Assembly (NCBI RefSeq): GCF_006345805.1
Contig: NC_043006.1
Span: 53,568,001 to 53,632,000 of the forward strand
Source of the DNA: Octopus sinensis
Lineage: Eukaryota
Reading direction: 5' to 3'
Length of the DNA: 64,000 bases
Below are positions 7,806 through 61,316 of this stretch, piece by piece (within the stretch, counting starts at the first letter, position 1; every line of letters starts with the position of its first letter). A model generated the notes under the pieces. That model saw nothing but the letters and a program-made list of their open reading frames with translations, had not been told where the DNA came from and made no database searches. The translations under genes and the position numbers were made by a program.

Positions 7806-8195
7806 GCAGGAGTGGCTGTGTGGTAAGTAGCTTGCTTACCAACCACAGGGTTCCAGGTTCAGTCCTACTGCTTGGCACCTTGCCTCAGGCCATCCATATA
7901 GCTTCAGGCCAACCAATAGCCTTGTGAGTGGATTTGGCAGGCAGAAACTGAAAGAACCCATCATATATATATATGTATATATGTGTATATATTTGTGTGT
8001 CTGTGTTTGTCCCCCCCAACATTGCTTGACAACCAATGCTGGTGCATTTACATCCCTGTAACTTAGTGGTTCCACAAAAGAGACTGATAGAATAAGAAAT
8101 AGGCTTACAATGAATAAGTCATGGGGTCGATTTGCTCAACTAAAGGCGGTGCTCCAGCATGGCCACAGTCAAATGATGTAAACAAGTAAAAGAAT
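7806..8195 (+). mobile_element. Abundant SINE family A (gtggctgtgtggtaag...ccttgggcaagtgtc)
   Basis: tRNA-like head, internal AT microsatellite, conserved 3' tail; many copies in the window. Confidence 0.85.
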
Positions 8196-8303
8196 ACAAG
8201 AATGCTACTGCCTATATTTAGAATGACATTGTAGGATAGGTGTGAGTGGCTAGCTCTGGCCAGATTGAATATAAAACACAAGGCATTTTTGGGCCATTTC
8301 TGG

Positions 8304-8646
8304 CAAATCGACCCCAGGACTTATCTTTGTAAGCCTAGTACTTATTCTATCAGTCTCTTTTGCCGAACCGCTAAGTTACAGGGACGTAAACACACCAGCA
8401 TCAGTTGTCAAGTGATGTTGGCGGGGGCAAACACAGACACACAAACATATACACACACACATACTTATATATATACATATATACGACGGGCTTCTTTCAG
8501 TTTCCGTCTACCAAATCCACTCACAAGGCTTTGGTTGGCCTGAGGCTATAGTTGAAGACACTTGCCCAAGGTGCCATGCAGTGGGACTGAACTCGGAACC
8601 ATGTGGTTGGTAAGCAAGCTTCTTACCACACAGCCTCTCCTACGCC
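8304..8646 (-). mobile_element. SINE family A, inverted copy
   Basis: Reverse complement of 7806-8195. Confidence 0.85.
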
Positions 8647-17235: not shown

Positions 17236-17338
17236 TACAAGTTGAGAACACAGATACAGATTTAGTGGTAAGACGGTTAGACGTCTATTTTTAGTATACA
17301 AGAGATCCATATAGTGATCTCTCATATTTTTTTTTATG

Positions 17339-17740
17339 TTAGCAGTATCACCAGGCGTTGCTCGGGTTTGTTTCGACCGTTTAGAATTGGAATTTTTGAA
17401 AAGTAAAAATTTTGCATTATGTAGTTTGTTATTCTCTTTAAGTGAATATTTTTCTGATTGAAATACACTGAAAAATGGCGACACGGCAGTAAAAAAATCG
17501 TAAAAAATAGGCATTTCCATAGAAAAAAAGCACGTTTTTTATGTAAATAATTTTTGGTGTTAACATGGTCCGATCTGAATTTTTTCTTCTTCAGAAGGAA
17601 GAGCAAGCCTTCTTCTATCATACTCTCAATTTTAGCTAACTTGCGCCGCAGGGTTGAGCAGGAGATAGTGTTAGTTGAAGAGTACCAAACCTGCCATACA
17701 CAGACAACTTCAGCTTTATATACATGCATATATATATATA
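17339..17740 (+). mobile_element. Non-autonomous Helitron-like element
   Basis: TAGCAGTATCACCAGGCGTTGCTCGGGTTTG start, shared with the 15525 copy. Confidence 0.55.
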
Positions 17741-17744
17741 TAAA

Positions 17745-17960
17745 GATAATGAGGTGGTGCAAGAGAGACTGCGCCGGTATGGTCATGTGTTACGAGTGGA
17801 TGAGGACAGCTGTGTGAGGAAGTGCCACTACCTAACTGGAAGGAATCTGTGAAAGAAGTAGACCCAGGAAGACACGAGATGAGGTGGTGAAGCATGACCT
17901 GGTGGCACGTAAAATGCATCATCCAAATGTGGTCGATGCCAGTGTCCACTGTCTCCCATG
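17745..17960 (+). mobile_element. RTE LINE 3' fragment
   Basis: gtggtgcaagagagactgcgccggtatggtcatgtg...agacccaggaagac, similar to the other RTE copies. Confidence 0.7.
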
Positions 17961-18051
17961 CCGGTGGTCCATAATAAGCAAGATGTGGTGTTGAATAGGA
18001 GATGGGGGCAAAATTAGTAATTTTTCAATTTCTCGTTATTTTCTCCATATC

Positions 18052-19001
18052 TGTTTGAGACTAATGATAAATCTCTAAACGAGATATAAACAGTAACTGC
18101 TCTATAACGTAAGGGGCATCAGCCATCTGAATGTGGCTAGGGACAGGGCAGGGTGGTGGGGGTGTTACTGATGCATTTAGCCCCAGGAGATCATCAACGT
18201 CACCAGGAGGGCTGACACCATCTCGGTGTCCTCTAGCCTGCAAAGGGAGATCATTCCCCGAAGAAGCGGATGCTACATACGGACCAGGTTTCAAGGTATT
18301 TGCCTATTATCAACGCATGGTAAGCACCGCTCCTCGACGAATAACTCTCTGTACAGGCTATATATTTAAGGATTTCACAGTAAACACATTTACTGATGTA
18401 GAAAATCCGTTCGAAAGCAATAATAAATCTCTAAACGAGATATAAACAGTAACTGCTCTATAACATAAGGGGCATCAGCCATCTGAATGTGGCTAGGGAC
18501 AGGGCAGGGCGGTGGGGGTGTTACTGGTCAGCCCTCCTGGTGACGTTGATGATCGCCTGGGGCTAAATGCATCAGTAACACCCCCACCGCCCTGCCCTGT
18601 CCCTAGCCACATTCAGATGGCTGATGCCCCTTATGTTATAGAGCAGTTACTGTTTATATCTCGTTTAGAGATTTATTATTGCTTTCGAACGGATTTTCTA
18701 CATCAGTAAATGTGTTTACTGTGAAATCCTTAAATATATAGCCTGTACAGAGAGTTATTCGTCGAGGAGCGGTGCTTACCACGCGTTGATAATAGGCAAA
18801 TACCTTGAAACCTGATCCGTATGTAGCATCCGCTTCTTCGGGGAATGATCTCCCTTTGCAGGCTAGAGGACACCGAGATGGTGTCAGCCCTCCTGGTGAC
18901 GTTGATGATCGCCTGGGGCTAAATGCATCAGTAACACCCCCACCACCCTGCCCTGTCCCTAGCCACATTCAGATGGCTGATGCCCCTTATGTTTGAGACT
19001 A
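18052..19001. mobile_element. Fold-back insertion: 421-bp near-perfect inverted repeat built from a 356-bp unit, flanked by a direct repeat
   Basis: Arms 18106-18526 and 18573-18993 (about 4 mismatches seen); TGTTTGAGACTA at 18052-18063 and 18990-19001. Confidence 0.8.
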
Positions 19002-20866
19002 TTACATTTCAAGTATTGCATCATCTTTGCAAGTGAAAATTGGTCAGCATAGTTGTTGTCTTCTTCTTCTTCCAATCAGGACTCACGTCATTAGCCACAA
19101 AGAACAATCTCTAATTCGAGCCTACTCTAAGCTACTAAGAATGCGTGCGGCAACTTGAAGATCCACCCACCACACGCGATAGACTGACGGTTGCACGGGC
19201 GCGAAAGCTATGTTGTTATTCTCATTCCGTAAACGGTGGCTTTTAACGGGTGGAGAGATGAACCATCCTGGGTTACAGAGGATTCGCAATCTAGACTAGG
19301 GTCTGAAAGTTTTACCACACCATAGTGGGTTACACCATGGTTGCTCTGCTTTGTGGCAGAAATATGAAGAAAGAGTGAGAGAAAGTTGTGGTGAAAGAGT
19401 ACAGCGGGATTTCTGGCCTTGTGTCAAAATTTTAAATCAATGTGGTAATATAGGGAATTGTAAAGCGGCGAGCTGGCAGAAACGTTAACACGCTGGGCGA
19501 AATGCTTAGCAGTATTTCGACTGCCGCTACGTTCTGAATTCAAATTCCCCCGAGGTCGACTTTGCCGTTCATCCTTTCGGGGTCGATTAAATAAGTACCA
19601 GTTACGAACTAGGGTCGATCTAATCGACTTAATCCCTTTGTTTATCCCCTCTATGTCTAGCCCCTTTGGCTGTTGGGAAGAACACCTTAAAAACACATTT
19701 TAATTGCCTAAAGCATTCGTTCTACAAGACCGTTTAACTGCGGATGGTCGTGAAGCGTTTTGTAAAAAATGCTGCCAATTTTCAGTAACAAAGAAGAGAT
19801 TATTGACACACAATCCATTTTGTCTTCTCCATCACGTAACACTGACTGATCAGTCTTTCTCTTATTCTTTATACAGATCGGAAGAGGAGTCTTTTTTTGT
19901 TTTGGGGGATTTTTTTACTAGCAGTTGTGTATTTCTCCAATAGGTATGAGAGTTTCAACAAGCCTCTCGATCCAGTATCACATTATACCAGGAAATCTAT
20001 ACTACATTGGCATTTCGTCAGTTACGGCGACGAGGGTTCCAGTTGATCTGATCAACGGAACGGCCTGCTCGTGAAATTAACGTGCAAGTGGCTGAACATT
20101 TCACAAACAGTTCTCAGAGAGATTCAGCGTGGCACAATATGACATGGCTGGCCCTTTGAAATACTACTCGTTTTTACCAGCTAAGTGGACTGCAGCAACG
20201 TAAAATAAAGTGCCTTGCTCAAGGACACACGCTCCCTTATGATCGTGAGCTGAATATTCTAGCCACTTACCTACCCACGTGCCATCACTATGGAAACCTG
20301 GAAATCTAACAAACCCCGAAATATACGTGTTCTCCCTGGCGTCTTATATTCGATGTAGTTCATATTGTGTACATCCAAAAATGCAGCACCTCGTGAACGT
20401 GGTGAAAATGTGAATGGCAGACTGGCTTTACTTGCTCGAAAATTTTCTGTTGTGGGTTTACATTCGTAATAAAGACGACCCTGATCTATTATCAAATCGC
20501 CAACATGCTAATATTTTTCTCGATCAAGAAAACATTATGGCAATTAGGGACTTAACCCCGTCAAGAGATACTCCAGATAATGGGTTTTTCTGTGTTGTTT
20601 TTTTTTTTTTTTCGAGAATTTATTAATATTCCCGAAAAACTCGCTGAATTGTTAACCATTATTCCTAATGAAACAGCTAGATAGCAACCTGATCAAACAT
20701 TATAAACTAACGAGCTCCCAACGAACTCTGTGTTACGTTTTACATGTATTGAAAGATTTCTCGAAAGATGTGATTACACGTAAATATTTTGTATTGTATT
20801 AGATATTATATTATTACGTTTGAATATAGTGAAATGTTGAGATGTTCTAATAATATTCTATGGATG

Positions 20867-20919
<53 letters not shown>

Positions 20920-30330: not shown

Positions 30331-30549
30331 CTATGTCACTAACTCTGTCTCCATTCTCATACTATTACTATCGTCATGGAAACCTGGCATGGGTTTCAAG
30401 AGTTCATCATTTGACTTCTCGTCGTACATTTGATTGGATTCGGTGTCTGTGTTCTGCATAGGAGGAATATTCTCACTGTCTTGATTGTCATCCCAGTCAA
30501 TCTTGAACCGGGTCACCCTTGGACATGTTGCCAAAATATTACGTTGTAA
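30331..30549 (-). CDS. ASF1: ASF1 coding exon 4 (LQRNILATCPRVTRFKIDWDD...METELVT*)
   Basis: ttctag|TTA acceptor; RNILA..PRVTRF.I.W motif; TAG at 30331-30333; spliced CDS is 621 nt = 206 aa. Confidence 0.96.
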   Translation of the reverse strand, partial: LQRNILATCPRVTRFKIDWDDNQDSENIPPMQNTDTESNQMYDEKSNDELLKPMPGFHDDSNSMRMETELVT

Positions 30550-31925
30550 CTAGAAGAGGAAAAGAGGAAGAAAAAAAAAATGGAATAAATAAAACTTTGC
30601 AACAGTAAATATATTAAAACTTCAGGATGATAATACTACACCACCCTGCTCTACCTAGTTGAAAACAAATGATATAAACCCATAATTAGTGTCAAAAAAT
30701 GCATTTGTACCCTACTGTATCAAATGACACATACACACGTGACCGGCTTCTGTCAGTTTCTTTTCACCCAAAGTTTTGGTTGACTCAACACTATAATAGA
30801 AGACACATGCCCAAAGTACCATGCAATGGGACTGAACCTAGGACCATGTAGTTGGAAAGCAAACTTCTTACTACACAACCACATCTGTTTAAGTTAGCTT
30901 TGCACCCACATGGTCTTGGGTCTCTGGTCATACAGCACAGCACTGACCAAGTATTGTAGCTACAGCTTGACCAATGACTTTTGAGTGGAATGCACTCTTC
31001 CCCCACTAGTGTGGTCCCTGTTGGTTTTTCCAGGCCGAGGAAGATGCAATCAGCTCTCTCCAACGGGGTACCTGTGTAAACAGCTTGACCAATACTATAT
31101 AGAAGCTTTGTCATATGCGTTTGTGTAAAGATGGATCCCTTTATGTCAAAGGGATTTGATTACTATTTGATTACTAGTGCCTGATGGCCCAGCCTCAAGA
31201 GAAATAAAAATATATACCAACATTAGAAACAAACATACATGTAGTGAAATTACCATGCAAGCTTCCTCAATATCTATAAAGCTGAAATGCGAAAAAGTTG
31301 CTTGATTTCTTGGTTATTTGTCTCACTTTGGGATGGTAACGGTTTAAGGGGTGGTAGATGGGGTTGGATTGGCACCAAAATTCACACTGGGAGGTGTGGG
31401 GGGGGGGTAAAATAAGGTGAGCAATGGTGTGAGGAGGGTTGCAAGTCGCTCGGGGCTACCGTTTGTTTGCCATGGTGAGGAATATGGGAAAAATTGAGTT
31501 TTAAAGAAGATAAAAACGAAAAAAGAAAAAGAAGGCAATAAAAAGAACCAGGCAAAGAAGACGAACAAAAGATGAAAGGGAAATGGAGACAACACGCACA
31601 GAACACCACCACCAAAACCCAAGTGAAGCACAGGTCAAAATAGCTAGTCTGTTAGAAATAACAGCTAAATCTCTCTCAAATTATGTCGTGTCACTAAAAC
31701 TCTTAAAGTTAGTGCCCCAGCATAGCCACAGTGCAATCACGGAAACCAGTCAATATGTCAACCATGAGAGAAATATCTCGATGAGTGATGAGAGAGGTTG
31801 ACCATCCAATTCACTTAGCCACTCAATTTTCATACCAATACAGAAATAAATTATTTTATATCATTTTCAACAGAAAACAAATACATGTCACATTACAAAA
31901 AAATAAATGTACATAATAAACCAAC

Positions 31926-32102
31926 CTTATCATAGACTGGCATGTCTGGAGGTGTTTCTTTCAGCTCAGGATCGCTGTATTCATTATTAACATAGTAACC
32001 AACCCGGATAAATTCCTTACTTTTGTATGAACAGGTCAGCAACACAACAGTTACACCAACTGCATCAGCTATTGGAATTTTACTAGTGTCTGGTGGCCCA
32101 GC
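31926..32102 (-). CDS. ASF1: ASF1 coding exon 3 (AGPPDTSKIPIADAVGVTVVLLTCSYKSKEFIRVGYYVNNEYSDPELKETPPDMPVYDK)
   Basis: Read manually (no ATG, so absent from the ORF track); ctctttag|GCT acceptor, AAG|gttggt donor; 177 nt; GVTVVLLTCSY...EFIRVGYYV motif. Confidence 0.97.
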
Positions 32103-34182
32103 CTAAAGAGAAATAAAAAATATATACAAACATTAGAAACAAACAAACACGTAGTGAAATTACCATGCAAGCTTAAACTGTTAGAAATAGCTAAATCTCT
32201 GTCACTTTTTGTAGCTCAGCACCCACCTTTACCATTATCATTTAACGACCGTTTTCCATGCTAGCATGGGTTGGGCGGTTTGACCGGGGTCTGGGAAGCC
32301 AGGAAGCTGCACCAGGCTCCAGTCTAATTTGGCAGTGTTTCTACAGCTTGATGCCCTTCCTGGTGCCAACCACTCCATGAGTGTAGTGGGTGTTTTTTAC
32401 ATGTCACCAACACAGAAGCCAGTCAAGGTGGTGCTGGCATCGGCCACGTTCAGATGGTGCTTTTTACATGCCACCGGCACGAGTATCACAACTACAATTT
32501 CCATTTGATTTTCATTTTGATGTACTTGACTCAATAGGTATCCTCAAGCATAGCAGGTCACCCTATGATCCAAGATTTTTTGAATGGGCTGGGGCTGGTT
32601 ATGCAAAACTGGTGTAGGATACAGCTGTGAACTCACATTATTTGTCAGGTCTTCGCAGTCACAGTATATTTCCAGAGGTCTCAGTCTTTCGTCATTGCCT
32701 CTGAGAAGCCTAACATTCAAAGGTCATGCTTGACCACCTCATCCCATGTCTTCCTGTGTCTGCCTCTACTCCAGATTCCTTCAACTGTTTGGGAGTGGCA
32801 CTTCTTCACACCTCTCTCCTCATCCATCCATAGTACATGACCATACCAGAGTGAACGTCTCTCTTGCACGCTACATCCTATGCTTCTTATGTCCAACATT
32901 TCTCCAGGGCACTTACACTGTCGTCTGTGCACACTGACCTTATACATCCAATGGATCATGCTAGCTTCATTTCTTTCGAGCCTACGCATGTCCCCCACAG
33001 TCATGGCCCATGTTTCACTGCAGTGAAGCATGGCAGTTCGCATACATGCATTGTACAATCTACCTTTCACTCTGAGCGAGAGGCCCTTTTCACCAGTAGG
33101 GGTAGAAGCTTTCTAAACTTTGCCCAGGCTATTCTTATTCTAGTGGTAACACTGAGCATCCACCCCCACTACTAACTTGGTCACCTAGGTAGCAGAAGCT
33201 ATCAACTACTTCTAGTTTCTCCCTGCTGGAGTGTGATGGAATCTGTTTTGTTTATTGCTCCTGTGCATCTACCACACACGAAAGCTATCTTCTCAGTTAA
33301 TCTTCCTTTGATGTTGCTGCACCTCTTATGTGTCCATAGCTTACACTGGGTACATCTTATAGAGTTTTTACCTACACCTTTTCTATAGATCGAGAGTGTG
33401 TGTGTTGTGTTCACCTTCCTACTTACTAGAACTTTGGTCTTTGCTACATTGATTCTAAGGCCTTTTGATTCTAAACTTTGCTTCCAGACCAGAAATTTCT
33501 TCTCTAGTTCTGGTAGTGATTCTGCTATGAGGGCCAGGTCATCAGAGGAGCTCCCAGGGGCAACCTGCCCTGAATTCCTGTTATTGCCTAGAGGACTATG
33601 ATAAATAAAAGGGGACTGAGGGCTGAACCTTGGTGGACCCCTACTTCTACCAGGAATTCTTCATTATACTCATTGCCAATCCTAACCTCACTAACGGCCT
33701 CTCTGTATAGAGCCTGTACAGCCCTTATTAACCATTCGTCAATCCCCAGTTTCCGCATCACCCACCAGATAAGAGATCGGGGGACCTTGTCAAAGACTTT
33801 CTCCAAGTCAATGAAAGCTAAGTATAGGGGTTTATCTTTAATTACGTATTTCTCCTGCAGTTGTCAAACCATGAATATGGCATCAGTGGTGCTTCTACTC
33901 GGCACAAAACCGAACTGCATCTCATCTAAGCAGACTCTCTCCCTAATGAGATGGGCTATGACCCTCACCGTGACCTTCATCAACTGATCCAGCAGTTTGA
34001 TACCCTTGTAGTTATTTCTATCCAGAGCATCACCTTTACCCTTGTAGCAGTTGACTATGGTGCTGCTACGCCAGTCATTGGGTATGACTCCATCATGAAC
34101 TACCTGTTCTATATTTAAGAGATGAGGAATTATGTACATTATTTACATTTGACAGATATTTGTCCTCATCTTGTTTGTTGTT

Positions 34183-34228
34183 AACACAACGTTTTGGCTG
34201 ATATACTCTCCAGCTTTCTTCAGATGTC
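34183..34228 (-). ncRNA. Minimal type I hammerhead motif, degenerate (GAAA changed to AAAA)
   Basis: gacat-CTGAAGA-aagctg(10 nt)cagcc-AAAAC-GTT/gtgtt on the - strand. Confidence 0.5.
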
Positions 34229-34489
34229 TTGGGAAAATTTCGAACCTGGGTTCTCATTCCTAAGGTATTTCTCAATGTTATTATTATTATTGTTCAGGTC
34301 ACTGCTTGGAATCAAACTCAGAATCTTGGGGTTAGTAGCCCGCGCTCTTAACCACTACGCCATATGCCTATGGGTTAAGAGCACGGCTACTAACCCTAAG
34401 ATTGAGAGTTCGATTCAAAGCAGTGACCTGAACAAAAATAACATAAAAAAACCCTTAGGAATGAGAACCCAGGTTCGAAATTTCCCCAA

Positions 34490-34535
34490 GACACCTGAAG
34501 GAGGCTGGAGGGTATATCAGCCGAAACGTTGTGTT
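34490..34535 (+). ncRNA. Minimal type I hammerhead ribozyme motif (variant core)
   Basis: gacac-CTGAAGGA-GGCTG(10 nt)CAGCC-GAAAC-GTT/gtgtt; palindromic ACGT stem III. Confidence 0.6.
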
Positions 34536-37500
34536 AACAACAAACAATATGAGGACAAATATCCATCGAATGTGTGACTAGGCCATAGTTCACATCACTG
34601 GATGTTTTAAGTATCTCAGCAGCGATTCCTGATGGGCTGGGGGCTTTTCCTGGCTTCATACTCTTAATTGCTTTATCTACCAGGGAGTTGTCTATTCGGA
34701 TAGCTGGTCCCTCTACTGGGTCAACATTTGGCAGGTTCTCCTCCCATTCATTCTCCATTTACAGCAGTCTTTCAAAATGGCTTCTCCAAGCCTCTTCCGT
34801 GACATCACAAAAAAAAAAAAATAAATAAATAGAAAAATGATAAACTAATTTTGAAAAGTAGTTTATCTATATTGTGCCTCTTTATGTGGATTAGTACCCC
34901 TTTCATTGATTTTCTTTTTTCTTTTCAATGAAAATTACTGCAAAGACAACATCTATAACAAAATTATACTTGACTTGGTGCAATAGCTCATGTTTCTGCT
35001 CACTGAAAATAACTTTATTTTAAAATTATTCCCGTCTTCAAAAGTATTAACGAATGTAAAAAGGTTTGTACTCAGACAGAATGCAATGCAATATTATTAG
35101 AGATGTACTTGCATAGCAAGTGACCTGACCTGAGATCGTGTGCTAAAACAAAAACAATTGCAGCGTGGAAGGTAAACCGTTAGATTCACTTAAACATTTA
35201 AATTTAATTTGTCAAAACATTTTCGTCACTTTGAGACCGCGACCTGTTGACAAAAATTCTGTGCTGCATGTCAGCACGCTGCAAATGTAATATTAAATAA
35301 CATTAAAATACTGTTTCCTAAAAAAAAAAAAACCTCAAACCCAATGAGTATACTGGGTGAAAGGTCGTAATACTGAACCACGAGTTCTTACACTGTGTAA
35401 TAAGAGCAAGTTCAAGCTATGAAACCAGCAAACTAATGTTTAAGATACGAGGGGCAAAAAAAAAGCAAATGAGAAATGAATTAAAACGAAATATAATACA
35501 AGGGAGATAATTATGTAAAACTATATTCTGATTTATCCCCCTTCGACATGAACACGCTGGGGAATTTTTCAGCGTTTTAGTCATAAAAACCTGTCACAAT
35601 GAAAATGTATCGCACTTAGTGCGGCGAAAACACCGACTCCCAAATAATGTTTAAGTTAAAAGTTTGTGTGCTTTTGAATGGCTAAAATAAATCTTCCACG
35701 CTGCAAATTGTTTCAACACAATCTCGGATCAAATTACTTGCCAGATAAATACATCCCTGGGTTTCCAAAAGGCTAATGGATACTATTTTCACTATCGCTA
35801 AATATCCGTAACAAACGGATTTGTTACACACACGACCTTAAATAAAAAGACTGTGTTAAACAATATAGTTACTGATACACGATTATCACAACTAGAATAC
35901 ATCATCAGTATATTTTAACGAATCCTGAGACAAAACAAAGTTTATCTAAGAAGGCTGATCTCAGGAATTTAAATCTCATGGAGATGACAAAGGACTGGGA
36001 TATCTGGCGATATGTGGTACTCAAGAAAACCTACCCCCATGTCAGTAAAACTGAAGTTCTGAAAGCAAAATGTCTGATACAAAATTGCGACCCCCTCCCC
36101 GCTTAATTTCCTCATCAAATCTTCCCCTCACCCCTCTTCTCTACCACTGATTTATCACTCATTTGCCAAATGCTATTTTCTGCAAATGACGGCAGAGCTA
36201 TCATTCTCACTACTGCAAACCATTTCAGTAGAGTTCCATCCTTCGTTATTAAACTGTCCCTCTTCACTCAACATTGATTATTCCATTCTTCTGAGCAACC
36301 AAATAATCTCTCCTCCCTTGAACCACTTCCTATTGATTTGCTTATATCACCACACATCTCTCACTTTCTCCTTATGCACTACATGTATCTCTTTTCACAC
36401 TTTTGCAACCTACCCACACATCATCTCTTTCTCTTTGTCCCACTGCTCTTCACTCCTCCTAGTAGATGCCAACCACCATCTACTCCCCAACTCTTCTTCA
36501 CTCCTATATCCCTCCCAATCTAGTCCTCATTTACTGAAACTGAAAGAAATCTGTCCATCCAACAACACATCTACTCTACCTAAACTTGTTCATCAGTCAG
36601 TATATTCCCACCCCAACCCCATTTTTTAACATCTCTCATTGCTACCTCTATCCAGCCACCCTTCTTGTTATGCCCAACCAGGGCTCACCCTGACACCCCA
36701 TTACCATTATCTGTATTTCTCTTTCCGGCCCCACACCAATTACTCCCATCCACTCTGGTATAATTTGAGCAGCTATGCATCTTTTCTATAGCAAGAAACC
36801 TAGTCTGTCCCCTTCCTTCATACACTAACCTTTCATCACTTAATACAAAGCTACCTCCTTCTGTAATGTAGCCTCCATTCAGTTAATAGGAATCCTTATC
36901 TTGCAAGCTACATGGTATCATTAATGTTAAGCTACAGCATTTAACGTCCCTTTCTCATGCTGGCATGAGTTGGGCAGTTTGACAGGAACTGGCAAGCCAG
37001 AGAGCTGCACCAAGTACCAGATGTTTGCTTTGGTATGGTTTCTACAACTGGATGCCCTTCCTAATACCAACCATCCACTTTACAGAGTGTAGTAGGTACT
37101 TTTTATGTGGTGCCACCATGGGGAATTAAATATACATACACACACACACACACAGGCCACCACCAAAGAACTTATGAGCTGTCATACTGATGATGTCTAC
37201 TGAGGAAGAAACATGTGTCCATAACTTAAGTGGTTAGCATTAAAAGGAACATCCAGCCATAGAAACCAAAGCAGACTTTGAAACAGATGCAGTCCTGACC
37301 TGTTGGATTCTGTCAAATCATTCAACACATGCCAGCATGGAAGATAGAGTTTGAAGATGATTATTATATGTATACATAAATCATTATCACAACTCATTAG
37401 CATTTAAACTGGTCATATATGCCCCAAATATTCTACCCGTTTTAATATTCAAACTGGCCAGATCCAGCCTCTCACATGTATCATACAATGTCATTCTAAA

Positions 37501-37747
37501 AATAAACAATCACATCATTGAAATCCCAAGACCAAAAGATATTGTATGATTAATTCAAAACAATATGGATAAATAAGTATTACATATGACAGAGAAATCT
37601 GAATGCTAAAGAGCTAATAACTAGCAAAAAAAAAAAAAAACTGCCTGAAAGGATATTTTTCAACAAATACTTATATTGCTTATAATTCACATAAAACAAG
37701 TTTTTAAAATCAAACCTGATTGGGGACCTGACCTATCATCAAGAGTA

Positions 37748-37961
37748 TTAACCCTTTTGTTACCGTATTTCTGCTGAGATGTTTTGTGTTTCTTTCAATT
37801 AATTTTGAATGTACCAAATAATTTAGTTATCAGTAAGCTAGTGTTAGGAACATAAATTGTGACTAAGGTTTGGGAGATTTTAATTCAGAACTTTTGAAAA
37901 CAAGACATTTGTACTACAGAGCCAGAGACGGTTTCAGCCAGGTTGGTATTGAAAGGGTTAA
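37748..37961. mobile_element. piggyBac-type MITE
   Basis: TTAA-CCCTTT...AAAGGG-TTAA termini. Confidence 0.75.
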
Positions 37962-38639
37962 ATGTATTACAATCCCGTCATTTTTTTTAAAGACTGTATT
38001 GCCCAATTTGCCCTCATTTTTAAGATGGTACTGTATGATATAAGGGAGATTTGGTTGCAGATGTTATACTGACCAAGACATGTGGTCAAGCCTTGAAACA
38101 GACATTTTGTTAGCAGCACTAGACAAATGCATTATATACTGTCAACCACATTCATAAAAAAAAATCCATCCTCCAAATTCACAAATATGTTTACATTATC
38201 ATCATCATCATTTAACATTCATTTTCCATGCTGGCAGGGGTTAGATGGCTTGACTGGAAGCTGGTAAGCTGGGGAGCTGCACCAAGTTCCAATCTGATTT
38301 GGCATAGTTTCTACAGCTGGATGCCCTTCCCAATGCCAACCATTGCAAGAGTGTAGCGGGTGTTTTTTATGTGCCAGTTACATAACAGAGGCATCGGCTA
38401 CAATTACAATCTCACTTGGCTTGATAGGTCTTCTCAAGCACAATATATTGCCAAAAGTCTCAGTCACTTATCACTGCCTCTGTAAGGCTCAAAGTTCAAT
38501 GGGTGCTTTTTACATGGCAGTTATGCCACTACTTCAATTTCACTTGGTTTAGCACAATATCCAAAATTTGCTAATAATTGCCCAGTTAAGCCTGACGCAA
38601 AGATTCTTATAAAAGGAGAAAAAAGCGAGAGAGTCAAAG

Positions 38640-39000
38640 AGCAAGTTATTCTTTTATTTGTTTGTCATTTGGTTGCAACCATGCCGGAACACTGCCTTGA
38701 AATGTTTTTGTCGAACAATTCAACTCCAGGACTTATTTTTAAGCCTAGTACTTATACTATTGGTCTCTTTGCCAAACCACTAAGTTACAGGGACATAAAT
38801 ACACCAACACTGGTTGTCAAGCAATGATGGGGGAAGAAACACAGACATAGTTATATATATATATAAGACAGGCTTCTTTCAGTTTCTACCAACCAAATCC
38901 ATTCACAAAGCTTTGATCAACCTGAGACTATAGAAGACATGCAGTGGGACTGAATCTGGAATCATGGTTGGGAAGCAAGCTTCTTACCACACAGCCACGG
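38640..39000 (-). mobile_element. SINE family A
   Basis: Reverse-complement similarity. Confidence 0.75.
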
Positions 39001-39871
39001 CAATTAGTAAACCCTTTCTAAATTACAAGGATCCACCAGATTAATGCTCAATTTTGGATTCTATAAGGTTAAGTAGATGGCACATAGCACACTGGATAAG
39101 TTGATTTATTGAAGTTAACTTCCTTTGTTAGAGAAACTGCTGTCAACATTTGATGCTAGGGAATCAGTTTTCAGTTTTACAGTAAAAACTACACCACCTT
39201 GTAAAACCAGACTTGACTAACCTACAAATTCCAAATCCAACATTTCAGTAGTGTTCATACTTGAGATAGTACCGTTACACAAAAGCACACTAGACCACAC
39301 TCAAAAGACAAGGATTCACTCAATAACACACTGCATCTTTTCACTACCCATCGTTAACTGCAACAGCAGCAACTCAATACTCTCCTCATTCATCATCATC
39401 ATTTAACGTCCGCTTTCCATGCTGGCATGGGTTGGACAGTTTGGCTGAGGATTGATTATCCCGAAGGCTGCACCAGGCTCAATCTGATCTGGCCAAGTTT
39501 CTACAGCTGGATGCCCTTCCTAATGCCAACCACTCCGAGAGTGTAGTGGGTGCTTTTACATGCCACCAGCACAAGGGCCAGTCAGGTGGTTCTGGCAACG
39601 ACCATGCTCAAAAGGTGTTTTTCACATGCTACCTGCACGGGAGCCAGTACGGTGGCAATGGCAATGAAGACGCTCGAATATTTTCATACACTACTGTGTC
39701 TGTCATACACAATCTTCTATAAAAACGTTCGGTTATGGGCAAGTATTAACTTACTTAGAAACAGGAGAAGACTGATGACAGAAAGGACATCAGGGTGTAG
39801 AAAATCTAACATAATATTCTGGCCAATTCATACAAGCATGGAAAAGTGGATATTGAAATGATACTGTTTTA

Positions 39872-39909
<38 letters not shown>

Positions 39910-40112
39910 TACACAGGAATACCTCAATTTAAAACAAACTGGCTCTGTCTAAACAAAGTGAAAAGAGGTGAATTTTCATAAAAATGATGTTATAAACAAC
40001 AATTATGTTCTCAACTGCAACTATAGCTATGGCCATTCCAAATATGCTAAATGTTGTTAGATCATAAATTTTCCAGTTATTTTGTCATTGAGTATGATTA
40101 TGTCATCAAAAG

Positions 40113-40478
40113 GCGCAGAAGTGGCTGTGTGGTAAGTAGCTTGCTTACCAATTACATGGTTCTGGGTTCAGTCCCACTGCGTGGCACCTTGGGCAAGTGT
40201 CTTCTACTATAGCCCTGGGCCTAGCCTTGTGAGTGGATTTGGTAGACAGAAACTGAAAGAAGCCCGTTGTATATATGTGTGTGTGTGTGTGTTTGTCCCC
40301 CCCCCCCAACATCACTTGACAATCGAGGCTGGTGTGTTTATGTCCCCATATCTTAGCGGTTTGGCAAAAGAGACCAATAGAATAAGTACTAGGCTTATAA
40401 AGAATAAGGACTGGGGTCGATTTGCTCAACTAAAAGTGGTGCTCTAGCATGGCCACAGTCAAATGACAAACAAAAGAG
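40113..40478 (+). mobile_element. SINE family A
   Basis: Same head and tail sequence. Confidence 0.85.
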
Positions 40479-40885
40479 TTATATTTTATTATGGCCTACT
40501 TTTTCCATGCTTGCATATCTATTGTTGAAACATCAGTGTTACAAATCTTTCATTTTACAATTAAATTGTTGATAATTTAAATGTTTCATTAAAAAGTAGA
40601 TAAAATGGATATCATATGAGGGTGTACATACACACACAAGATATCTGTTCCTGTCACTTTATGTTAGTTTCTTATCCCTCAATTCTGTACCCTGCCTTAT
40701 TGAGGGGTTTTGTCTTGCAGATACTTGCAATGCTACAGCAAGAAGCTATAATTCATCACAGATTATTAACATTCACACAGATACACACAAAACACATTTT
40801 AACATCCACTTTTCCAGGCATGCATGAGGCAGATTGTACTTCCTGTCACCAATCCTCACCTGTTTCCAATCAATGTAACATTTCA

Positions 40886-41256
40886 GGCGTAGGAGAGGCT
40901 GTGTGGTAAGTAGTTTGCTTATGAACCACATGGTTCCGGGTTCAGCCCCACTGCATGGCACCTTGGGCAAGTGTCTTCTACTATAGCCTTGGGCCGACCA
41001 AAGCCATGTGAGTGGATTTGGTAGACGGAAACTGAAAGAAGCCCATTGTATATATGTGTGTGTCTGTGTTTGTTCCCCCAACATCGCTTGACAACCGATA
41101 CTGGTGTGTTTACGTCTCTGTAACTTAGCGGTTTGGCAAAAGTGCCCGATAGAATAAGTACTAGGCTTCCATAGAATAAGTCCTGGGGTCGATTTGCTCA
41201 ACTAAAGGCAGTGCTCCAGCATGGCCACAGTCAAATGACTGAAACGAGTAAAAGAG
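40886..41256 (+). mobile_element. SINE family A
   Basis: Same head and tail sequence. Confidence 0.85.
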
Positions 41257-41929
41257 TTGGATAGGTTGCAATAAATTAGAAAGAAACAGTGCCACTCATT
41301 TACAATTTTCACCCAATATTAAGGAATGGAAACACAAACACACACACAAAGAGTGAGAGAGACAATAGGCATCATTCAGTTTCCATTTACCAAATCACCT
41401 CACAAGAATTTGATCAGTCCAGAACTATAATAGATGCCCAGGGTGCCACACAGTGAAACTGAACTTAAAACCATCATTTAACGTCTGCTTTCCATGCTGG
41501 TATGGGTTAGATGGTTTGACTGAAACTGGTAAGCTGCACCAAGTTCCAGTTTGATTTGGCATGGTTTTTACAGCTGGATGCCTTTTCTAACACCAACCAC
41601 TCCAACAGTGTAATGGGTGCCACCAACAGAGGTACCACTTACGTGACACTGACACTGGCCACAAATGCAATTCCACTTGGCTTGGCAAGTCTTCTTCATC
41701 ACAACATATTCATTTCTACTCAAGGCACAAGTCCCGAAATCTTTGGGGAGTGGGCCAGTCAACTAGATCGACCCCAGTATGCAACTGGTACTTAATTTAT
41801 CAACCCCATAAGGATGAAAGGCAAAGTCAACCTCAGCGGAATTTGAACTCAGAACATAAAGACAGACAAAATTATGCGTTTCGCCCAGCGTAATAACGTT
41901 TCTGCCAGCTCAACATATTGCCAAAGGTT

Positions 41930-42320
41930 TCAGTCATTTGTCATCACCTCCTTCAGGCCCAATGTTCAAAGATCAGGCTTCACCACCTCGCTCCATGTCT
42001 TCCTGAGTGTACCTCTACAGTTTGAGATGGCACTAATTTACACAGCTGTCCTTGTCCATATGCATCACATGACCATACCAGCAGTTGTCTCTCTTGCACA
42101 CCACATCTGATACCTCTTATGCCCAGCTTTTCATTCAAGATGCTTACACTATTGAACATGCACACTGTCATTGCACATCCAGCAAAGCATACTAGCTTCA
42201 TTTCTTTCAAGCCTACATATGTCCTCAGCAGTTACAGCCCATGTTTCACTGTTGTGTAGCATGCCTGTTCATACACAGGCATCGTACAGTCTGCGTTTCA
42301 TTCTGGAAACAAGCTTCTTA
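41930..42320 (-). mobile_element. RTE LINE C-terminal fragment
   Basis: LNEKLGIRGIRCGVQERQL frame; similar to 43670-44026. Confidence 0.75.
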
Positions 42321-43634
42321 ACTTCAGTGCCATGCCTGCACCCTATGTATGTATGTTTATTCTTGCATATGTATGTGACAGAGAGAGGGGTGGAGTGGAT
42401 GAGTATATCTGTGTTTCCTTGTCTTGACATTGCATGAGAGTCGTAAATGATTGTCACTGTCATACGAGCAGTGTCGTTCATTTCTAATATTCTGTAAATG
42501 CATGTCTGCTCAAGGGGAAATATTACCTTGCTTGAAAATAGGTGAAGACTGGCAACAAGAAGGATATCTGGCCAAAGAGTATCTGCCTCAATAAACTGTA
42601 CAACCCATGCAAGCATGGAAAAAGGAACATTACATCATGATGATGGTGACACACGCACTCAAGCACAAATGTGTTTGCATCTCCTTGTCTTGATATTGTA
42701 TGATAGTAGTAAATGAGTGTCATCATCATTGCAAGCTTTCACGAAAACATGTCTGGCTATGAGATAAAAAAATACATTGCTTGACAACAGATGAGGGTTA
42801 GTAACAAGCAAGAAGGGCATGAATCCATAGAAAATCATCTCCAACAAATTCCATCTGACCCAAGCAAGTAGATGTTAAACTGATGAGAGATAAATATATA
42901 CATACACAATGGGCTTCTTTCAGTTTCTATCTACTAAATCTACTCACAAGGCTTAGATCAGCTAACAGCGGCCAGGGAAGACATTTGCCCAAAATACCAC
43001 ACAGTTGGGAAGCAAACTTCTTGATTACAAACTCATGCTTGCATCTAAGGTGAATTATAACACACACACACACACAACAGAAGTATGTCATAGGCATAGC
43101 TGTATTTGCATCACTATTTGGTTTTGGGTTCAATCCCAGTAACAGGAATTGATAAATACTAAGAATTCCATCATGTGTTTATGTGTATCTGTGCCTTCAC
43201 TGTTTAAATATTTGAGCAATGCATTAAAACAAAGTTACCATCTATGCCAATGTCTGTGAACCTTCTGCCATAAAAAATAGGTTTGGCCACTGAACTGTTT
43301 AAAGGTCAAGTTGAAATAATAACTAACATGGAAACAAAGTGAGGAAGGGCATCCAGTCATATTAAAAAAACTATCTCTAAGTTTTGTCTGATCCAAGCCA
43401 ACACAAAAAAAAAAAGTGGAGGTTAAAACGATACTTGCCCATACTTGCTTGGGCCAGACAGAGTTTATTGAAGATTTTGCTAATGTTGGATGCCTTTCCT
43501 GTCACTAACCTTCACTTGTTTTTCAAGCAAGGCAAATATTTCTCGTTGGCAATGAAAACAGTAGAATGTAAAGAATATTTTATGTAAAGTAAAAAGAATG
43601 TCAAGATCATTTATGATTAAAAATACTTATTATA

Positions 43635-44520
43635 ATCGTTTCTGAATCCCTTTCACTCGCATTATACTCATGCACACCATTACTTGTATAAATGATTGCC
43701 AATTCAAAAGCATTCGTAGATGGACTTTTCCACTCAAGATTGTAAGTGCCTTGAGAGAAAAGTTGGACCTAAGAAGCATCAGATGTGGTGTGCAAGAGAG
43801 GCGTCTACGCTGGTATGGACACATAGTAAGAATGGATGAAGATAGTTGTGTGAAAAAGAGCCACACCCTGGCGGTTGAGGGAACCTGTGGAAGAGGCAGA
43901 CCCAGGAAAACCTGGGACGAGGTGGTGAAGAACGACCTTCGCTCTTTAGGTCTCACCGAGGAAATGACCAGAGACCGAGACCTTTGGAAGTATGCTGTGT
44001 GCAAGAAGACCCGGCTGGACAAGTGAGCCCATAACCCATAGCCCCCACCTGGGACGTAGTCAGTCCACCTATGCATACCTTCCTTCTTGGGTCACATAAC
44101 TCTACTTGTGAAGACCTGTTGAGGCAAGTGAAAATGGACAAAATGGACAAAATCAAAAGCAAATTCGGTGAACATTAATGGAATTTGTAGTTTTGTGGTA
44201 CCAGTGCCGGTGGCACATACGAAAACCATCCAAACGTGGCCGTAGCCAGTACCGCATTGACTGGCCTCCGTGCCGGTGGCACGTAAAAAACACCATCCGA
44301 GCGTAGCCATTCGCCAGCCTCGTCTGGCATTTGTGTCGGTGGCACATAAAAATCACCCACTACACTCTCGGAGTGGTTGGCGTTAGGAAGGGCATCCAGC
44401 TGTAGAAACACTGCCAGATCTGACTGGCCTGGTGCAGCCTTCAGGCTTCCCAGACCCCAGTTGAACCGTCCAACCCATACTAGCATGGAAAGCAGACGTT
44501 AAACGATGATGATGATGATG
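43635..44520 (+). mobile_element. 5'-truncated RTE LINE 3' end
   Basis: RRLRWYGHIVRMDED...GRGRPRKTWDEVV...DRDLW; 3' UTR tandem units; (GAT)n tail. Confidence 0.9.
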
Positions 44521-45734
44521 ATTTCTTTTTGAAAAACAAGTCTATTGTTGATTGCTGAGAAGCTTTTTTTTTTTTTGCTTTCTACAAATTTCTCAGTAAC
44601 ATGCAAGAACATTGATCATGGTAGAAGAAACTTTTGCACTTCGTTCAAAATTTGGATCTTGTGCTTCAAAAAACTCCTAAACCCAAGTCCTTGTAAAGTG
44701 AGGTATGACTGAATATAGCACAAGGATAAAGTAAGAAAAAATATGCACATGCATATTTGTGTGAATACTAGGACATCTGGGCTGATAGCTATCTATGGTA
44801 GTTATTGTCTGATACTGCATATCACATGCATCACAGTGATGTCTTCAAATCAACAATGAAGTAATCACATCCTGGCAAGTTAAGATCTACCCTAATCAAA
44901 ACCAAGCTACAAGCATTTCTCCACCAAAAAAATACTTAGAAACAAGGAGGAACCAATGATACTTGGACATTACACTGAATTAACTATTTGAATATATGAC
45001 ATTAAAAATATCATACTCAACATCAGATGTATTTTGGAGACTGTACCACAATGGAAAATGAAGACCACTCAACTACACTGATATTATTAGCAGAAGAACA
45101 TCAAACTGAGAGTCTACCAAAGCTAATGGTAGACACATTCCTAGCATAACATAATGAAGTGCACCTCAGCTTGTAGATGACTTGCATGTATATGTGTGAA
45201 ACAAGAGAACCAGATCAAATATATAAAGAGTATTGCAATTCAAGTTACTTTGAAGAGTTCAGCAGCTAGTCTGAAGAGAAACCTTAGTCCTTGAGATGCA
45301 GCTTTTGGCTATGAGACTTCCTGACCCTCAGGAGGCAGCTTATAAATGGTACATTTTCATCACACATATCTCACCATGTCCTACAAATACACACACATAC
45401 CTAATGGCTAGATTTAGGTACAGGATCACAATCCCTATCAATTTTCCCAGTACAAGCATCATCATCATCATTTAACATCCGCTTTTCATGCTAGCATGGG
45501 TTGGACGATTTTGACTGAGGGCTGGCGAACCGGATGGCTGCACTAGGCTCCAATCTTGATCTGGCAGAGTTTCTACAGCTGGATGTCCTTCCTAATGCCA
45601 ACCACTCCGAGAGTGTAGTGGGTGCTTTTTACGTGCCACCGTATTATTAGGGATAATATAATACTGCTAACAGCATACAACAGATGTGAGCAAATTACAT
45701 ACAAGAGAATACAGAAAAAGAAAATAAGTCTTAC

Positions 45735-45850
45735 TTGAAACACAAACATGTGTCGTCCACCAGGAACAGGTCCAACAAGAACTGAATCGAGCACTTGGTC
45801 ATAGTCCATGCTTTCTGCAGAGCCAACATAGATGATTTTCCACTCAAGAT
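45735..45850 (-). CDS. ASF1: ASF1 coding exon 2 ([39 protein letters not shown])
   Basis: ttag|AT acceptor, CAA|gtaag donor; 116 nt; canonical ASF1 core. Confidence 0.97.
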
Positions 45851-46229
45851 CTAATAAACATAACAAAACAATAGATGAAAAACTAAGATAAATTCATCAG
45901 AATTATTGACCCTGAAATGATAAAAAAATGAAGTTGACCACAAAAGGCTTAACTATATATCACAAAGTACAATATGTTTCTGATTGAAAAACAAAGTCAG
46001 AAATTTTGAAGCAAGTAGTTGGTCAAAACTATCAACTCAAGTATTTTACTGCTTCTTATCAATTCCACAAGGATTAGTTGACTTTGCACTGCTAGGAGTC
46101 ATATCGCTGTACACTAACGTCGTGAATAATTGAACAAGTGAAGCACAACTACAAGGTAAGACATTTGTTTTTTGGGGATTCAGTGATGGTTTGTTGCTTG
46201 TGTTTATTTTTGTCAAACAAGAAATCTCC

Positions 46230-46915: not shown

Positions 46916-46949
46916 TATCTATGTAATGTCTTTATGGCAAATTTGATGA

Positions 46950-47290: not shown

Positions 47291-47423
47291 ACAAACAATA
47301 TAAAAAATACAAATCTCTCTCTCTTTTTCTTGTTTCTTCCTTATTCCATTTTTGGTACTTAATGTAAAAAAGGTAAAGTATATATGGCCGTATCTGTGGT
47401 AACTGAAAGACAATGCAATATTA

Positions 47424-61240: not shown

Positions 61241-61316
61241 GTCTTACAGCTGTTTCTGGGATATCTCAAGTGATAGGCTATCATGTCTGTACACTGGGTA
61301 TTCCGTCATCAGAGAC
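61241..61316 (-). ncRNA. Type I hammerhead ribozyme motif (inverted copy)
   Basis: Reverse complement carries the same intact CTGATGA, GAAAC and GTA core and the same stem I. Confidence 0.72.

What the first reader, a model, noticed from the sequence alone, without database searches (positions are those of the whole stretch)
18052..19001. TSD-flanked fold-back insertion built from a circularly permuted 356-bp unit
Seen: the left half is about 1.3 tandem copies of a 356-bp unit (taaatctctaaacgag at 18068 and 18424). At 18527 the sequence switches strand and runs about 1.3 units back, giving 421-bp arms (18106-18526 / 18573-18993) with about 4 mismatches. The 46-bp spacer is itself the inverted continuation of the unit. 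TGTTTGAGACTA flanks both ends. The unit is more GC/CpG-rich than the background and contains several small hairpins (gacacc/ggtgtc, agcca/tggct, atctc/gagat, ggga/tccc). Inference: both halves overshoot one unit length, implying a circular or multimeric template of retrozyme/viroid-like size, copied with a template switch and integrated recently. I found no canonical hammerhead core in the unit on either strand, so any processing element would be of another type. Any transcript would form a long dsRNA hairpin.
Basis: partly seen in the sequence, partly recalled or inferred. Interest (0 to 1): 0.7.

Follow-up and report, generated by a model that had tools for sequence, protein, structure and literature searches.

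The report
Young fold-back retro-insertion in an octopus genome
A 926-bp piece of DNA made of a 356-bp repeat copied 1.3 times forwards and 1.3 times backwards was inserted recently next to the octopus ASF1 gene. Its shape matches the known insertion signature of Penelope-like retrotransposons, not a new kind of circular RNA replicon.

Summary
Bases 18064-18989 (926 bp) are a true insertion. The orthologous Octopus vulgaris locus is about 96% identical along the whole alignable stretch (window 17258-59889). It lacks the insertion and carries TGTTTGAGACTA once, so the 12-bp target-site duplication is real.

The insert is 463 nt of a 356-bp unit (u1 to u356 to u107), joined bluntly to 463 nt of the same unit on the other strand (u153 back to u47). 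No hammerhead, HDV-like or other Rfam ribozyme is present on either strand.

The architecture is the published signature of Penelope-like element (PLE) insertions:
- a partial tandem;
- an adjacent head-to-head inverted copy;
- a 42-46-nt extension at one end only;
- a short duplication of an AT-rich target.

Best reading (confidence about 0.55): a non-coding, ribozyme-less, retrozyme-like element was copied from a multimeric RNA by reverse transcription primed from both cut target strands.

One variant (u91) is T in the first lap and C in the second lap of both halves. This favours a linear multimer with unequal monomers over a rolling monomeric circle.

I found no other copy and no sequence link to a PLE, because no octopus genome could be searched by DNA. 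I rate it a new member of a known kind, of moderate interest.

The parts
18052..18063 (.). Left copy of the 12-bp target-site duplication, TGTTTGAGACTA.
   Evidence: Identical to 18990-19001. It is present once at the orthologous empty site of O. vulgaris, L003 40336-40347.
18064..18526 (-). Left half, 463 nt: unit u1-356 (18064-18419, first lap), then u1-107 (18420-18526, second lap). The inferred RNA sense is the minus strand. The plus strand would be the cDNA primed from the top-strand nick.
   Evidence: for the coordinates. The orientation is inferred from target-primed geometry (3' ends outwards) and from the strand asymmetry of RNA folding.
18064..18109 (-). One-sided extension ('tail', 42-46 nt; u1-46) with no partner in the right arm. 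It contains the ATCTC/GAGAT stem-loop. It lies between the two inferred reverse-transcription start sites.
   Evidence: The right half ends at u47, or u43 if the 4-nt TGTT overlap is counted. It is compared with the 30-40-bp PLE tail (PMC8557442, PMC3846280, PMC11167929).
18527..18572 (+). Central 46-nt spacer: the reverse complement of u153-108. Under the model it is the stretch by which the right-hand cDNA ran further than the left-hand one.
   Evidence: The joint 18526|18527 has no microhomology.
18527..18989 (+). Right half, 463 nt: reverse complement of u153-1 (18527-18679, second lap), then of u356-47 (18680-18989, first lap). The inferred RNA sense is the plus strand.
18990..19001 (.). 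Right copy of the target-site duplication. Its first 4 nt (TGTT) also match the unit (u46-43), giving 4 nt of primer-template microhomology.
18735..18871 (+). 137-nt segment of the unit (u301-165) that folds into a long imperfect hairpin, shown here in the right half. The same segment lies at 18228-18364 on the minus strand.
   Evidence: Folding energy is -58.1 kcal/mol with z = -6.2 on this strand, against -42.2 and z = -3.0 on the complement.
18358..18368 (.). TATA-like motif CTATATATTTA inside the unit, readable in both directions.
   Evidence: Read directly from the sequence. Promoter function was not tested. A comparable bidirectional TATA is described in PLE pseudo-LTRs (PMC3846280).

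Best explanation
This is a young insertion of a short, non-coding, non-autonomous retroelement with a 356-nt unit. It is of the kind mobilised by Penelope-like elements (PLEs): retrozyme-like in size and tandem habit, but without a hammerhead.

Inferred mechanism:
1. A multimeric transcript of a tandem array was the template.
2. The element's endonuclease cut both strands of an AT-rich target 12 bp apart.
3. Each free 3'-OH primed reverse transcription at one of two internal start sites 42-46 nt apart on the RNA. The top strand started at u1. The bottom strand started at u47, with 4 nt (TGTT) of pairing to the target.
4. Both cDNAs ran about 1.3 units (463 nt each), probably on the same RNA with one enzyme 46 nt behind the other.
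5. The leading cDNA stopped at u153 and the trailing one at u107. The two 3' ends were joined bluntly and each strand was completed on the other.

This yields two head-to-head copies, a 46-nt central spacer, a one-sided 42-46-nt tail and a 12-bp duplication.

Shown: the insertion, the TSD, the geometry, the absence of ribozymes and ORFs, and the young age. Inferred: the enzyme family, the RNA template, the same-RNA leader and trailer, and the order of steps.

No host function is implied. Any read-through transcript would fold into a hairpin of about 417 bp.
For: Insertion and target:
- An empty site with a single TGTTTGAGACTA lies in O. vulgaris.
- The target is AT-rich: 32.5% G+C within +-60 nt. 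The top-strand nick falls in A|TT, the motif preferred by the anole PLE (PMC11167929).

Architecture against the published PLE signature:
- A partial tandem of 1.3 units is present in each half.
- The inverted copy is head-to-head, with both 3' ends outwards.
- An extension is present at one end only, 42-46 nt.
- The published signature is partial tandems, an adjacent inverted 5'-truncated copy, a 30-40-bp tail at one end and TSDs of 8-10 bp (PMC8557442, PMC3846280).
- In vitro a PLE protein cleaves and extends both strands and starts at two adjacent internal RNA sites whose distance is the tail (PMC11167929).

Geometry of the two halves:
- Newly made DNA is 463-464 nt on the left and 463-467 nt on the right. 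The start offset (42-47 nt, 46 if TGTT is the primer) equals the end offset (exactly 46). My estimate is that this equality arises by chance in about 2% of cases for uniformly placed ends.
- The central joint is blunt, as in end-to-end template jumps.

Template:
- u91 is T in the first lap and C in the second lap of both halves. This fits both cDNAs copying the same two unequal monomers.

RNA strand:
- Circular MFE has z = -4.5 on the proposed sense strand and -2.3 on the other. For the 137-nt hairpin segment the values are -6.2 and -3.0.

Non-coding nature:
- ORF translations have no Pfam family and no homologue among 5.8 billion proteins.

Plausibility in this genus:
- O. vulgaris has 31 PLE families with 336 insertions at <=2% divergence (PMC13282606).
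- Non-autonomous PLE derivatives are known (PMC7229834, PMC8557442, bioRxiv 10.64898/2026.07.22.740005).
Against: - No sequence similarity to any PLE could be tested, so the link is architectural only.
- Canonical PLE pseudo-LTRs and all retrozymes carry a hammerhead, and none is here. Naiad and Chlamys PLEs also lack one, but Naiads are described as old remnants in cephalopods (PMC8557442).
- The tail (42-46 nt) is somewhat longer than the published 30-40 bp.
- Equal lengths of the two cDNAs are not a general property of PLE insertions. In Adineta vaga the inverted copy is much shorter (PMC3846280).
- The bottom-strand nick is not at ATT.
- Only this one copy was seen. It is absent from 64 kb of window and about 117 kb of three related loci.
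- LINEs (RTE, CR1, Dong-R4, L1-Tx1) are more abundant and also recently active in octopus. An RTE-like fragment lies just to the left of the site.
Confidence: 0.55

Rival explanations
1. LINE-mediated retrocopy with twin priming. A transcript of a 356-bp satellite was reverse-transcribed in trans by an octopus LINE (RTE, CR1, Dong-R4 or L1-Tx1). The second target strand primed internally on the same RNA, which gave the inversion.
For: - A variable-length TSD of 12 bp, 4 nt of microhomology at the right junction and two outward 3' ends fit target-primed reverse transcription in general.
- LINEs are the most active retroelements in O. vulgaris.
- LINE fragments are common in the window.
Against: - There is no poly(A) or microsatellite tail at either end.
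- The unit has no similarity to the LINE fragments in the window.
- Twin priming places the second primer at an arbitrary internal site. It does not predict two starts 42-46 nt apart or cDNAs of equal length.
- Extension of both strands has been reported for a PLE and, according to that paper, not for R2 or L1 (PMC11167929).
Confidence: 0.18
2. DNA-level capture. A fragment or extrachromosomal circle of a satellite array that already carried a fold-back inversion was captured at a staggered double-strand break. The break was then filled in, which gave the 12-bp duplication.
For: - The central joint is blunt and microhomologies at the outer junctions are short, which fits end joining.
- The monomers differ (u91, perhaps u3 and u46), as in genomic arrays.
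- Fold-back inversions with short spacers are common products of break repair (established knowledge).
Against: - Breaks repaired with captured DNA do not normally give a clean 12-bp duplication.
- Both outer ends have the polarity expected of cDNA attached to target 3'-OH ends.
- The equality of the 46-nt loop and the 42-46-nt overhang would be a coincidence.
Confidence: 0.12
3. A roughly 356-nt circular RNA (retrozyme- or viroid-like) was copied by rolling-circle reverse transcription with a strand switch, and it is processed by an unknown element.
For: - Both halves exceed one unit.
- The unit is within the 170-400-nt range of animal retrozyme circles (PMC7229834).
- The RNA is highly self-paired on one strand.
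Against: - No known ribozyme occurs on either strand.
- u91 differs between laps in both halves. That needs unequal monomers, or later arm-to-arm gene conversion.
- A linear multimer explains everything that a circle explains.
Confidence: 0.08
4. A DNA transposon with long terminal inverted repeats (Foldback- or MULE-like), a DIRS-type element, or an assembly artefact.
For: The arms are long and nearly perfect inverted repeats. Long-read assemblies can contain palindromic chimeras.
Against: - The termini are not inverted copies of each other: the left end is ATGATAAATC..., the right end is ...CCCCTTA, and the left has 42-46 extra nt.
- DIRS elements make no TSD, and this insertion has one.
- An artefact would not be flanked by a precise 12-bp duplication of a site that is intact in the sister species. 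It would also not show 3 arm mismatches.
Confidence: 0.05

Closest known systems
Insertion architecture of endonuclease-positive Penelope-like elements (Penelope/Poseidon, Neptune, Naiad, Chlamys) and their non-autonomous derivatives such as Chlamys-N and MRC1
   Same: Partial tandem copies. An adjacent inverted copy in head-to-head orientation. An extension of tens of nt at one end only. A short TSD of variable length in an AT-rich target. A TATA-like motif in the repeated part. No poly(A).
   Different: The unit is only 356 bp and has no ORF. No hammerhead is present, unlike canonical animal PLEs. The tail is 42-46 nt and not 30-40 bp. The two inverted halves are equal in length. No sequence relation to a PLE has been shown.
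Animal non-LTR retrozymes (short tandem repeats with type I hammerheads, expressed as circRNAs; PMC7229834; proposed PLE derivatives, bioRxiv 10.64898/2026.07.22.740005)
   Same: Monomer size (150-450 bp). Tandem organisation. G+C below 50%. A TSD longer than 4 bp. A strongly self-paired RNA.
   Different: The defining hammerhead is absent on both strands. Circular RNA has not been tested. The fold-back arrangement is not described for retrozymes in the papers I read.
L1 twin-priming inversions
   Same: Two target strands prime on one RNA. The result is an inverted 5' part, a TSD and junction microhomology.
   Different: There is no A-tail. The two priming sites are adjacent (42-46 nt apart), not far apart. 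Both halves cover the same repeated sequence.

Membership tests
PLE-type insertion (non-autonomous PLE derivative) | Partial tandem copies forming pseudo-LTR-like direct repeats | tested here: met
   Each half holds 1.3 units. Direct repeats have a period of 356 bp.
PLE-type insertion (non-autonomous PLE derivative) | Adjacent inverted, 5'-truncated copy in head-to-head orientation | tested here: met
   The arms are 417-426 nt long and 99% complementary. Both ends have 3'-end polarity facing outwards.
PLE-type insertion (non-autonomous PLE derivative) | [quoted passage not shown] | tested here: met
   The left end alone carries 42-46 extra nt, u1-46. This is slightly longer than the published range.
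PLE-type insertion (non-autonomous PLE derivative) | Short TSD of variable length | tested here: met
   The TSD is 12 bp and is proven by the empty site in O. vulgaris.
PLE-type insertion (non-autonomous PLE derivative) | Sequence similarity of the 3' part to an autonomous PLE of the same genome | not testable with these tools
   No octopus genome or repeat library can be searched by DNA here. The unit is absent from the window and from loci L001-L003.
PLE-type insertion (non-autonomous PLE derivative) | Hammerhead motif in the repeated part (canonical clades; absent in Naiad and Chlamys) | tested here: not met
   No Rfam hammerhead reaches E<=10. There is no CUGANGA core, and no full descriptor match even with one core mismatch.
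Animal non-LTR retrozyme | Type I hammerhead ribozyme in each monomer | tested here: not met
Animal non-LTR retrozyme | Short tandem monomers of 150-450 bp with low G+C | tested here: met
   The monomer is 356 bp with 46% G+C.
Animal non-LTR retrozyme | Expressed as monomeric circular RNA | not testable with these tools
   No transcript data are available here.
L1-type twin priming | 3' poly(A) or LINE-type tail next to the TSD | tested here: not met
   The ends read ...CCCCTTA|TGTT and ACTA|ATGATAAA, with no A-run or microsatellite.
DIRS retrotransposons | Integration without a TSD; an internal complementary region | tested here: not met
   A 12-bp TSD is present.
TIR / Foldback DNA transposons | The two termini are inverted copies of each other | tested here: not met
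   The left terminus has 42-46 nt with no counterpart at the right terminus.
HDV-like or other small self-cleaving ribozyme at the unit boundary | Nested double-pseudoknot fold, or an Rfam ribozyme match | tested here: not met
   My own descriptor gave 0 hits on either strand, and 5-8% of shuffles give at least 1 hit. Rfam gave no match.

The most novel reading that the evidence does not exclude
The 356-nt unit is the DNA copy of a small, highly structured circular RNA that multiplies or is processed without any known self-cleaving ribozyme. It would be a ribozyme-less, retrozyme- or viroid-like agent of cephalopods, captured by a host reverse transcriptase.

A more modest novel reading is also open. 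The locus may be a 'fossil' showing that the two reverse transcriptases of a PLE dimer travel on one RNA 46 nt apart, which would explain both the tail and the inverted joint.
Probability: 0.07. Interest if true: 0.8.

Novelty: new member of a known kind. Interest (0 to 1): 0.4.

Why it matters
The mechanism of PLE integration is still largely unknown. The only in vitro study reports cleavage and extension of both strands and two adjacent start sites.

This insertion is very young: the arms are 0.72% diverged and the empty site is intact in the sister species. It therefore preserves every junction at single-base resolution:
- two starts 42-46 nt apart;
- two ends exactly 46 nt apart;
- equal cDNA lengths;
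- a blunt central joint;
- a lap-specific variant.

If other copies repeat this pattern, it would be genomic evidence for how PLE-type enzymes make tails and inverted repeats. It would also show that short tandem elements without hammerheads can be mobilised in animals.

For the host it is most likely neutral. It lies about 11 kb downstream of ASF1 and could yield a long dsRNA hairpin if transcribed.

Tried and rejected
Searches for other copies, all negative:
- Exact look-ups of unit ORFs.
- Homologue searches with the 104-aa forward ORF and the 86-aa reverse ORF.
- Exact DNA patterns in viral, metagenome and prokaryote collections.

Locating the organism and the empty site:
- Pfam on large window ORFs gave nothing. 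The ORF at 208-960 is not on record.
- The ASF1 route worked.
- The Argonauta locus L001 shares only exons and repeats with the window.
- The O. bimaculoides locus L002 stops 2.3 kb short of the site.
- The O. sinensis record could not be fetched.

Ribozymes, all negative:
- Rfam at the gathering threshold and at E<=10. The only hits were microRNA models matching the long hairpin, which is an artefact.
- My own hammerhead descriptor and HDV-like descriptor.
- A candidate 7-bp pairing, GUCAGCC/GGCUGAU, starting at the inferred RNA 5' end did not extend to an HDV-like fold.

Mechanisms rejected:
- Simple snap-back. The self-copy would run into target DNA after u47, but the left half continues with u46-u1. 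There is also no terminal pairing at the joint.
- SL-RNA, 5S or snRNA gene repeat: no Rfam match.
- Coding fragment: no Pfam family.
- DIRS, TIR transposon and assembly artefact: see the rivals.

The second large fold-back, at 61107-62188, has matching inverted termini and looks like a TIR element. It is not the same kind of insertion.

Full report
**Observation.**
- The repeat finder gives direct repeats with a 356-bp period in both halves. It gives inverted arms 18101-18526 / 18573-18998 at 99% complementarity with 46 nt between them.
- BLAST of 18064-18419 against the window maps four pieces: u1-356 at 18064-18419, u1-107 at 18420-18526, the reverse of u1-153 at 18679-18527, and the reverse of u43-356 at 18993-18680. 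Nothing else in the 64 kb matches.
- TGTTTGAGACTA flanks the insert at 18052-18063 and 18990-19001.
- The unit has 46% G+C and CpG observed/expected 0.69. The rest of the window has 37.7% and 0.37.

**Where the window comes from, and the empty site.**
- The window is eukaryotic: it is rich in microsatellites and has no tRNA or Rfam gene.
- It carries the four coding exons of the histone chaperone ASF1 on the minus strand.
- The spliced protein is identical to the ASF1 of Octopus vulgaris, O. bimaculoides and O. sinensis.
- The O. bimaculoides locus (L002) is 84-89% identical in non-coding DNA and ends 2.3 kb short of the site.
- The O. vulgaris locus (L003, OX597822.1) is about 96% identical and colinear over window 17258-59889. 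The window therefore comes from a close relative, probably O. sinensis. That is an inference, because the O. sinensis record could not be fetched.
- In O. vulgaris, window 17258-18063 aligns to L003 41142-40336 and window 18990-20886 aligns to L003 40347-38440. The two flanks overlap by exactly one TGTTTGAGACTA.
- The 926 bp are therefore a true insertion with a 12-bp target-site duplication, made after the split from O. vulgaris.
- The arms differ at 3 of 417 sites (0.72%), against about 4% between the species. If the arms evolve freely, the insertion is roughly one-sixth as old as the split.

**Anatomy at single-base resolution.**
- The left half is u1-356 plus u1-107, which is 463 nt.
- The joint 18526|18527 is blunt. 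The forward unit would continue with A and the reverse unit would be preceded by T, and neither is seen.
- The right half is the reverse of u153-1 plus the reverse of u356-47, which is 463 nt. It is followed by TGTT, which belongs both to the unit (u46-43) and to the target.
- The left half therefore starts 42-46 nt further out than the right half, and the right half runs exactly 46 nt further in.
- Six sites vary among the copies.
  - u91 is T in both outer copies and C in both inner copies.
  - u3 and u46 differ between the left outer copy and the inner copies.
  - u125, u221 and u254 differ between the two outer copies.
  - The two inner copies are identical over 107 nt.

**What the unit is not.**
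- No Rfam family reaches its threshold.
- At E<=10 the only hits over the hairpin are microRNA models, an artefact of any long hairpin, plus weak snoRNA models. No hammerhead, HDV, twister, pistol, hatchet or hairpin ribozyme appears.
- There is no CUGANGA box on either strand. With one core mismatch allowed, there is still no hammerhead with helices.
- My HDV-like descriptor finds nothing.
- The ORFs in the unit (104 aa forward; 86 aa reverse in tandem context) have no Pfam family. They also have no relative among 5.8 billion proteins.
- The unit is therefore non-coding.
- It does fold well. As a circle the reverse strand has z = -4.5 and the forward strand -2.3.
- A 137-nt segment folds into a long imperfect hairpin at -58.1 kcal/mol (z = -6.2) on the reverse strand. 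The complement gives -42.2 (z = -3.0). This points to the reverse strand as the RNA strand.

**What it resembles.** Papers on Penelope-like elements describe this architecture.
- Insertions are 5'-truncated and form partial tandems (pseudo-LTRs).
[quoted passage not shown] - In Adineta vaga such inserts have TSDs of 8-10 bp, a 31-bp tail on one inverted pseudo-LTR and a bidirectional TATA. Pseudo-LTRs alone can mobilise unrelated DNA in trans (PMC3846280).
[quoted passage not shown] It prefers AT-rich DNA (ATT). It starts reverse transcription at two adjacent internal RNA sites whose distance is the tail, and it is predicted to be a dimer. The proposed template is an RNA of several tandem copies (PMC11167929).
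- Naiad and Chlamys PLEs lack hammerheads, and non-autonomous Chlamys elements make multicopy head-to-tail insertions.
- Animal non-LTR retrozymes are tandem repeats of 150-450 bp with TSDs longer than 4 bp (PMC7229834). They have been proposed to be PLE derivatives.
- O. vulgaris has 31 PLE families with 336 insertions at <=2% divergence (PMC13282606).

**Proposed mechanism (inferred).**
1. Both outer junctions have the polarity of cDNA attached to a target 3'-OH, so the RNA is the reverse strand. This agrees with the folding asymmetry.
2. The top-strand end ...GACTA-3' (nick in A|TT) primed at u1.
3. The bottom-strand end primed at u47 after pairing 4 nt (ACAA with UGUU).
4. Both cDNAs are 463 nt long. 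The 46-nt shift between their starts reappears exactly between their ends.
5. This is what one expects if both enzymes copied the same RNA, one 46 nt behind the other, until the leader stopped at u153.
6. The two 3' ends were then joined without homology, as in end-to-end template jumps, and each strand was completed on the other.
7. The same model explains u91. Both cDNAs first copied the 3'-most monomer (T) and then the next one (C).

For uniformly placed ends, I estimate that the equality of lengths would arise by chance in about 2% of cases. It is not a general feature of PLE inserts, so the lockstep step is the weakest part of the model.

**Rivals.**
- LINE twin priming shares the target-primed logic. 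However, there is no A-tail or microsatellite tail and no similarity to the LINE fragments in the window. It also gives no reason for adjacent start sites.
- Capture of a satellite fold-back fragment at a break does not predict a clean 12-bp duplication or the 46/46 symmetry.
- A rolling circular RNA is not excluded. It is disfavoured by u91 and by the lack of any ribozyme.
- A TIR or Foldback transposon, a DIRS element and an assembly artefact are contradicted by the unequal termini, the TSD, the intact empty site and the arm mismatches.

**Limits.**
- I could not search any octopus genome by DNA. Copy number, the source array and any similarity to a PLE (or a LINE) tail are therefore unknown.
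- Filing the element under PLE-mobilised elements rests on architecture and on published biochemistry, not on homology.
- The defining hammerhead of retrozymes was tested and is absent. The element is retrozyme-like, not a retrozyme.

**Verdict.** The finding is real and well preserved. It is most likely a new, ribozyme-less member of the non-autonomous elements mobilised by Penelope-like retrotransposons. It is of moderate interest, mainly as a clean record of the integration mechanism.

Noticed in passing
window 30343-49939 (minus strand): ASF1 histone-chaperone gene, with four coding exons at 49939-49832, 45851-45732, 32102-31923 and 30546-30343. The spliced product is identical to the ASF1 of three Octopus species. 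The focal insertion lies about 11 kb downstream of the stop codon.
   Followed up: yes
window 61107-62256: A second large fold-back. The arms are about 450 nt at 92-96% complementarity with a 172-nt spacer. Both termini match as inverted copies (TATAATTGGTCATCTG...), and a TA duplication is possible. An extra 64-nt partial copy lies at 62193-62256. It looks like a long-TIR Tc1/mariner-type non-autonomous element, not a PLE-type insert.
   Followed up: partly
window 35728-37231 versus L003 23686|23687: A 1504-bp segment is present in the window and absent from O. vulgaris. Only a GG microhomology marks the junction, and the segment contains old repeats. It is more likely a deletion in O. vulgaris than an insertion here.
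   Followed up: partly
window 42410-44520 versus L003 18494-15419: This stretch is not colinear between the two species. It contains an RTE-like LINE tail ORF (43670-44026), which suggests recent LINE turnover near ASF1.
   Followed up: no
window 17740-17980; also 32717-33070 (-), 43670-44026 (+), 60353-60517: A C-terminal fragment of a LINE reverse-transcriptase ORF (RLRWYGHV...GRPRKTW motif) lies just left of the focal site, and related fragments lie elsewhere in the window. A 62-bp tandem array at 60353-60517 resembles part of this region.
   Followed up: partly
window 19460-19680, 47427-47617, 53141-53308 and others; L001: There are multiple copies of a SINE that I recognise from memory as the tRNA-derived cephalopod type. 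Related copies occur in the Argonauta hians ASF1 locus, so the family predates the split between Octopus and Argonauta.
   Followed up: no
O. sinensis record GCA_006345805.1: The gene model carrying the ASF1 protein spans about 250 kb and contains another gene (claudin-like) inside it. It is probably a merged or mis-joined annotation.
   Followed up: no
window 7808-8641, 34145-34573, 52397-52690: Three further inverted-repeat pairs, with arms of 75-150 nt at 85-94% complementarity. The pair at 34145-34573 looks like two SINE-like copies in inverted orientation.
   Followed up: no
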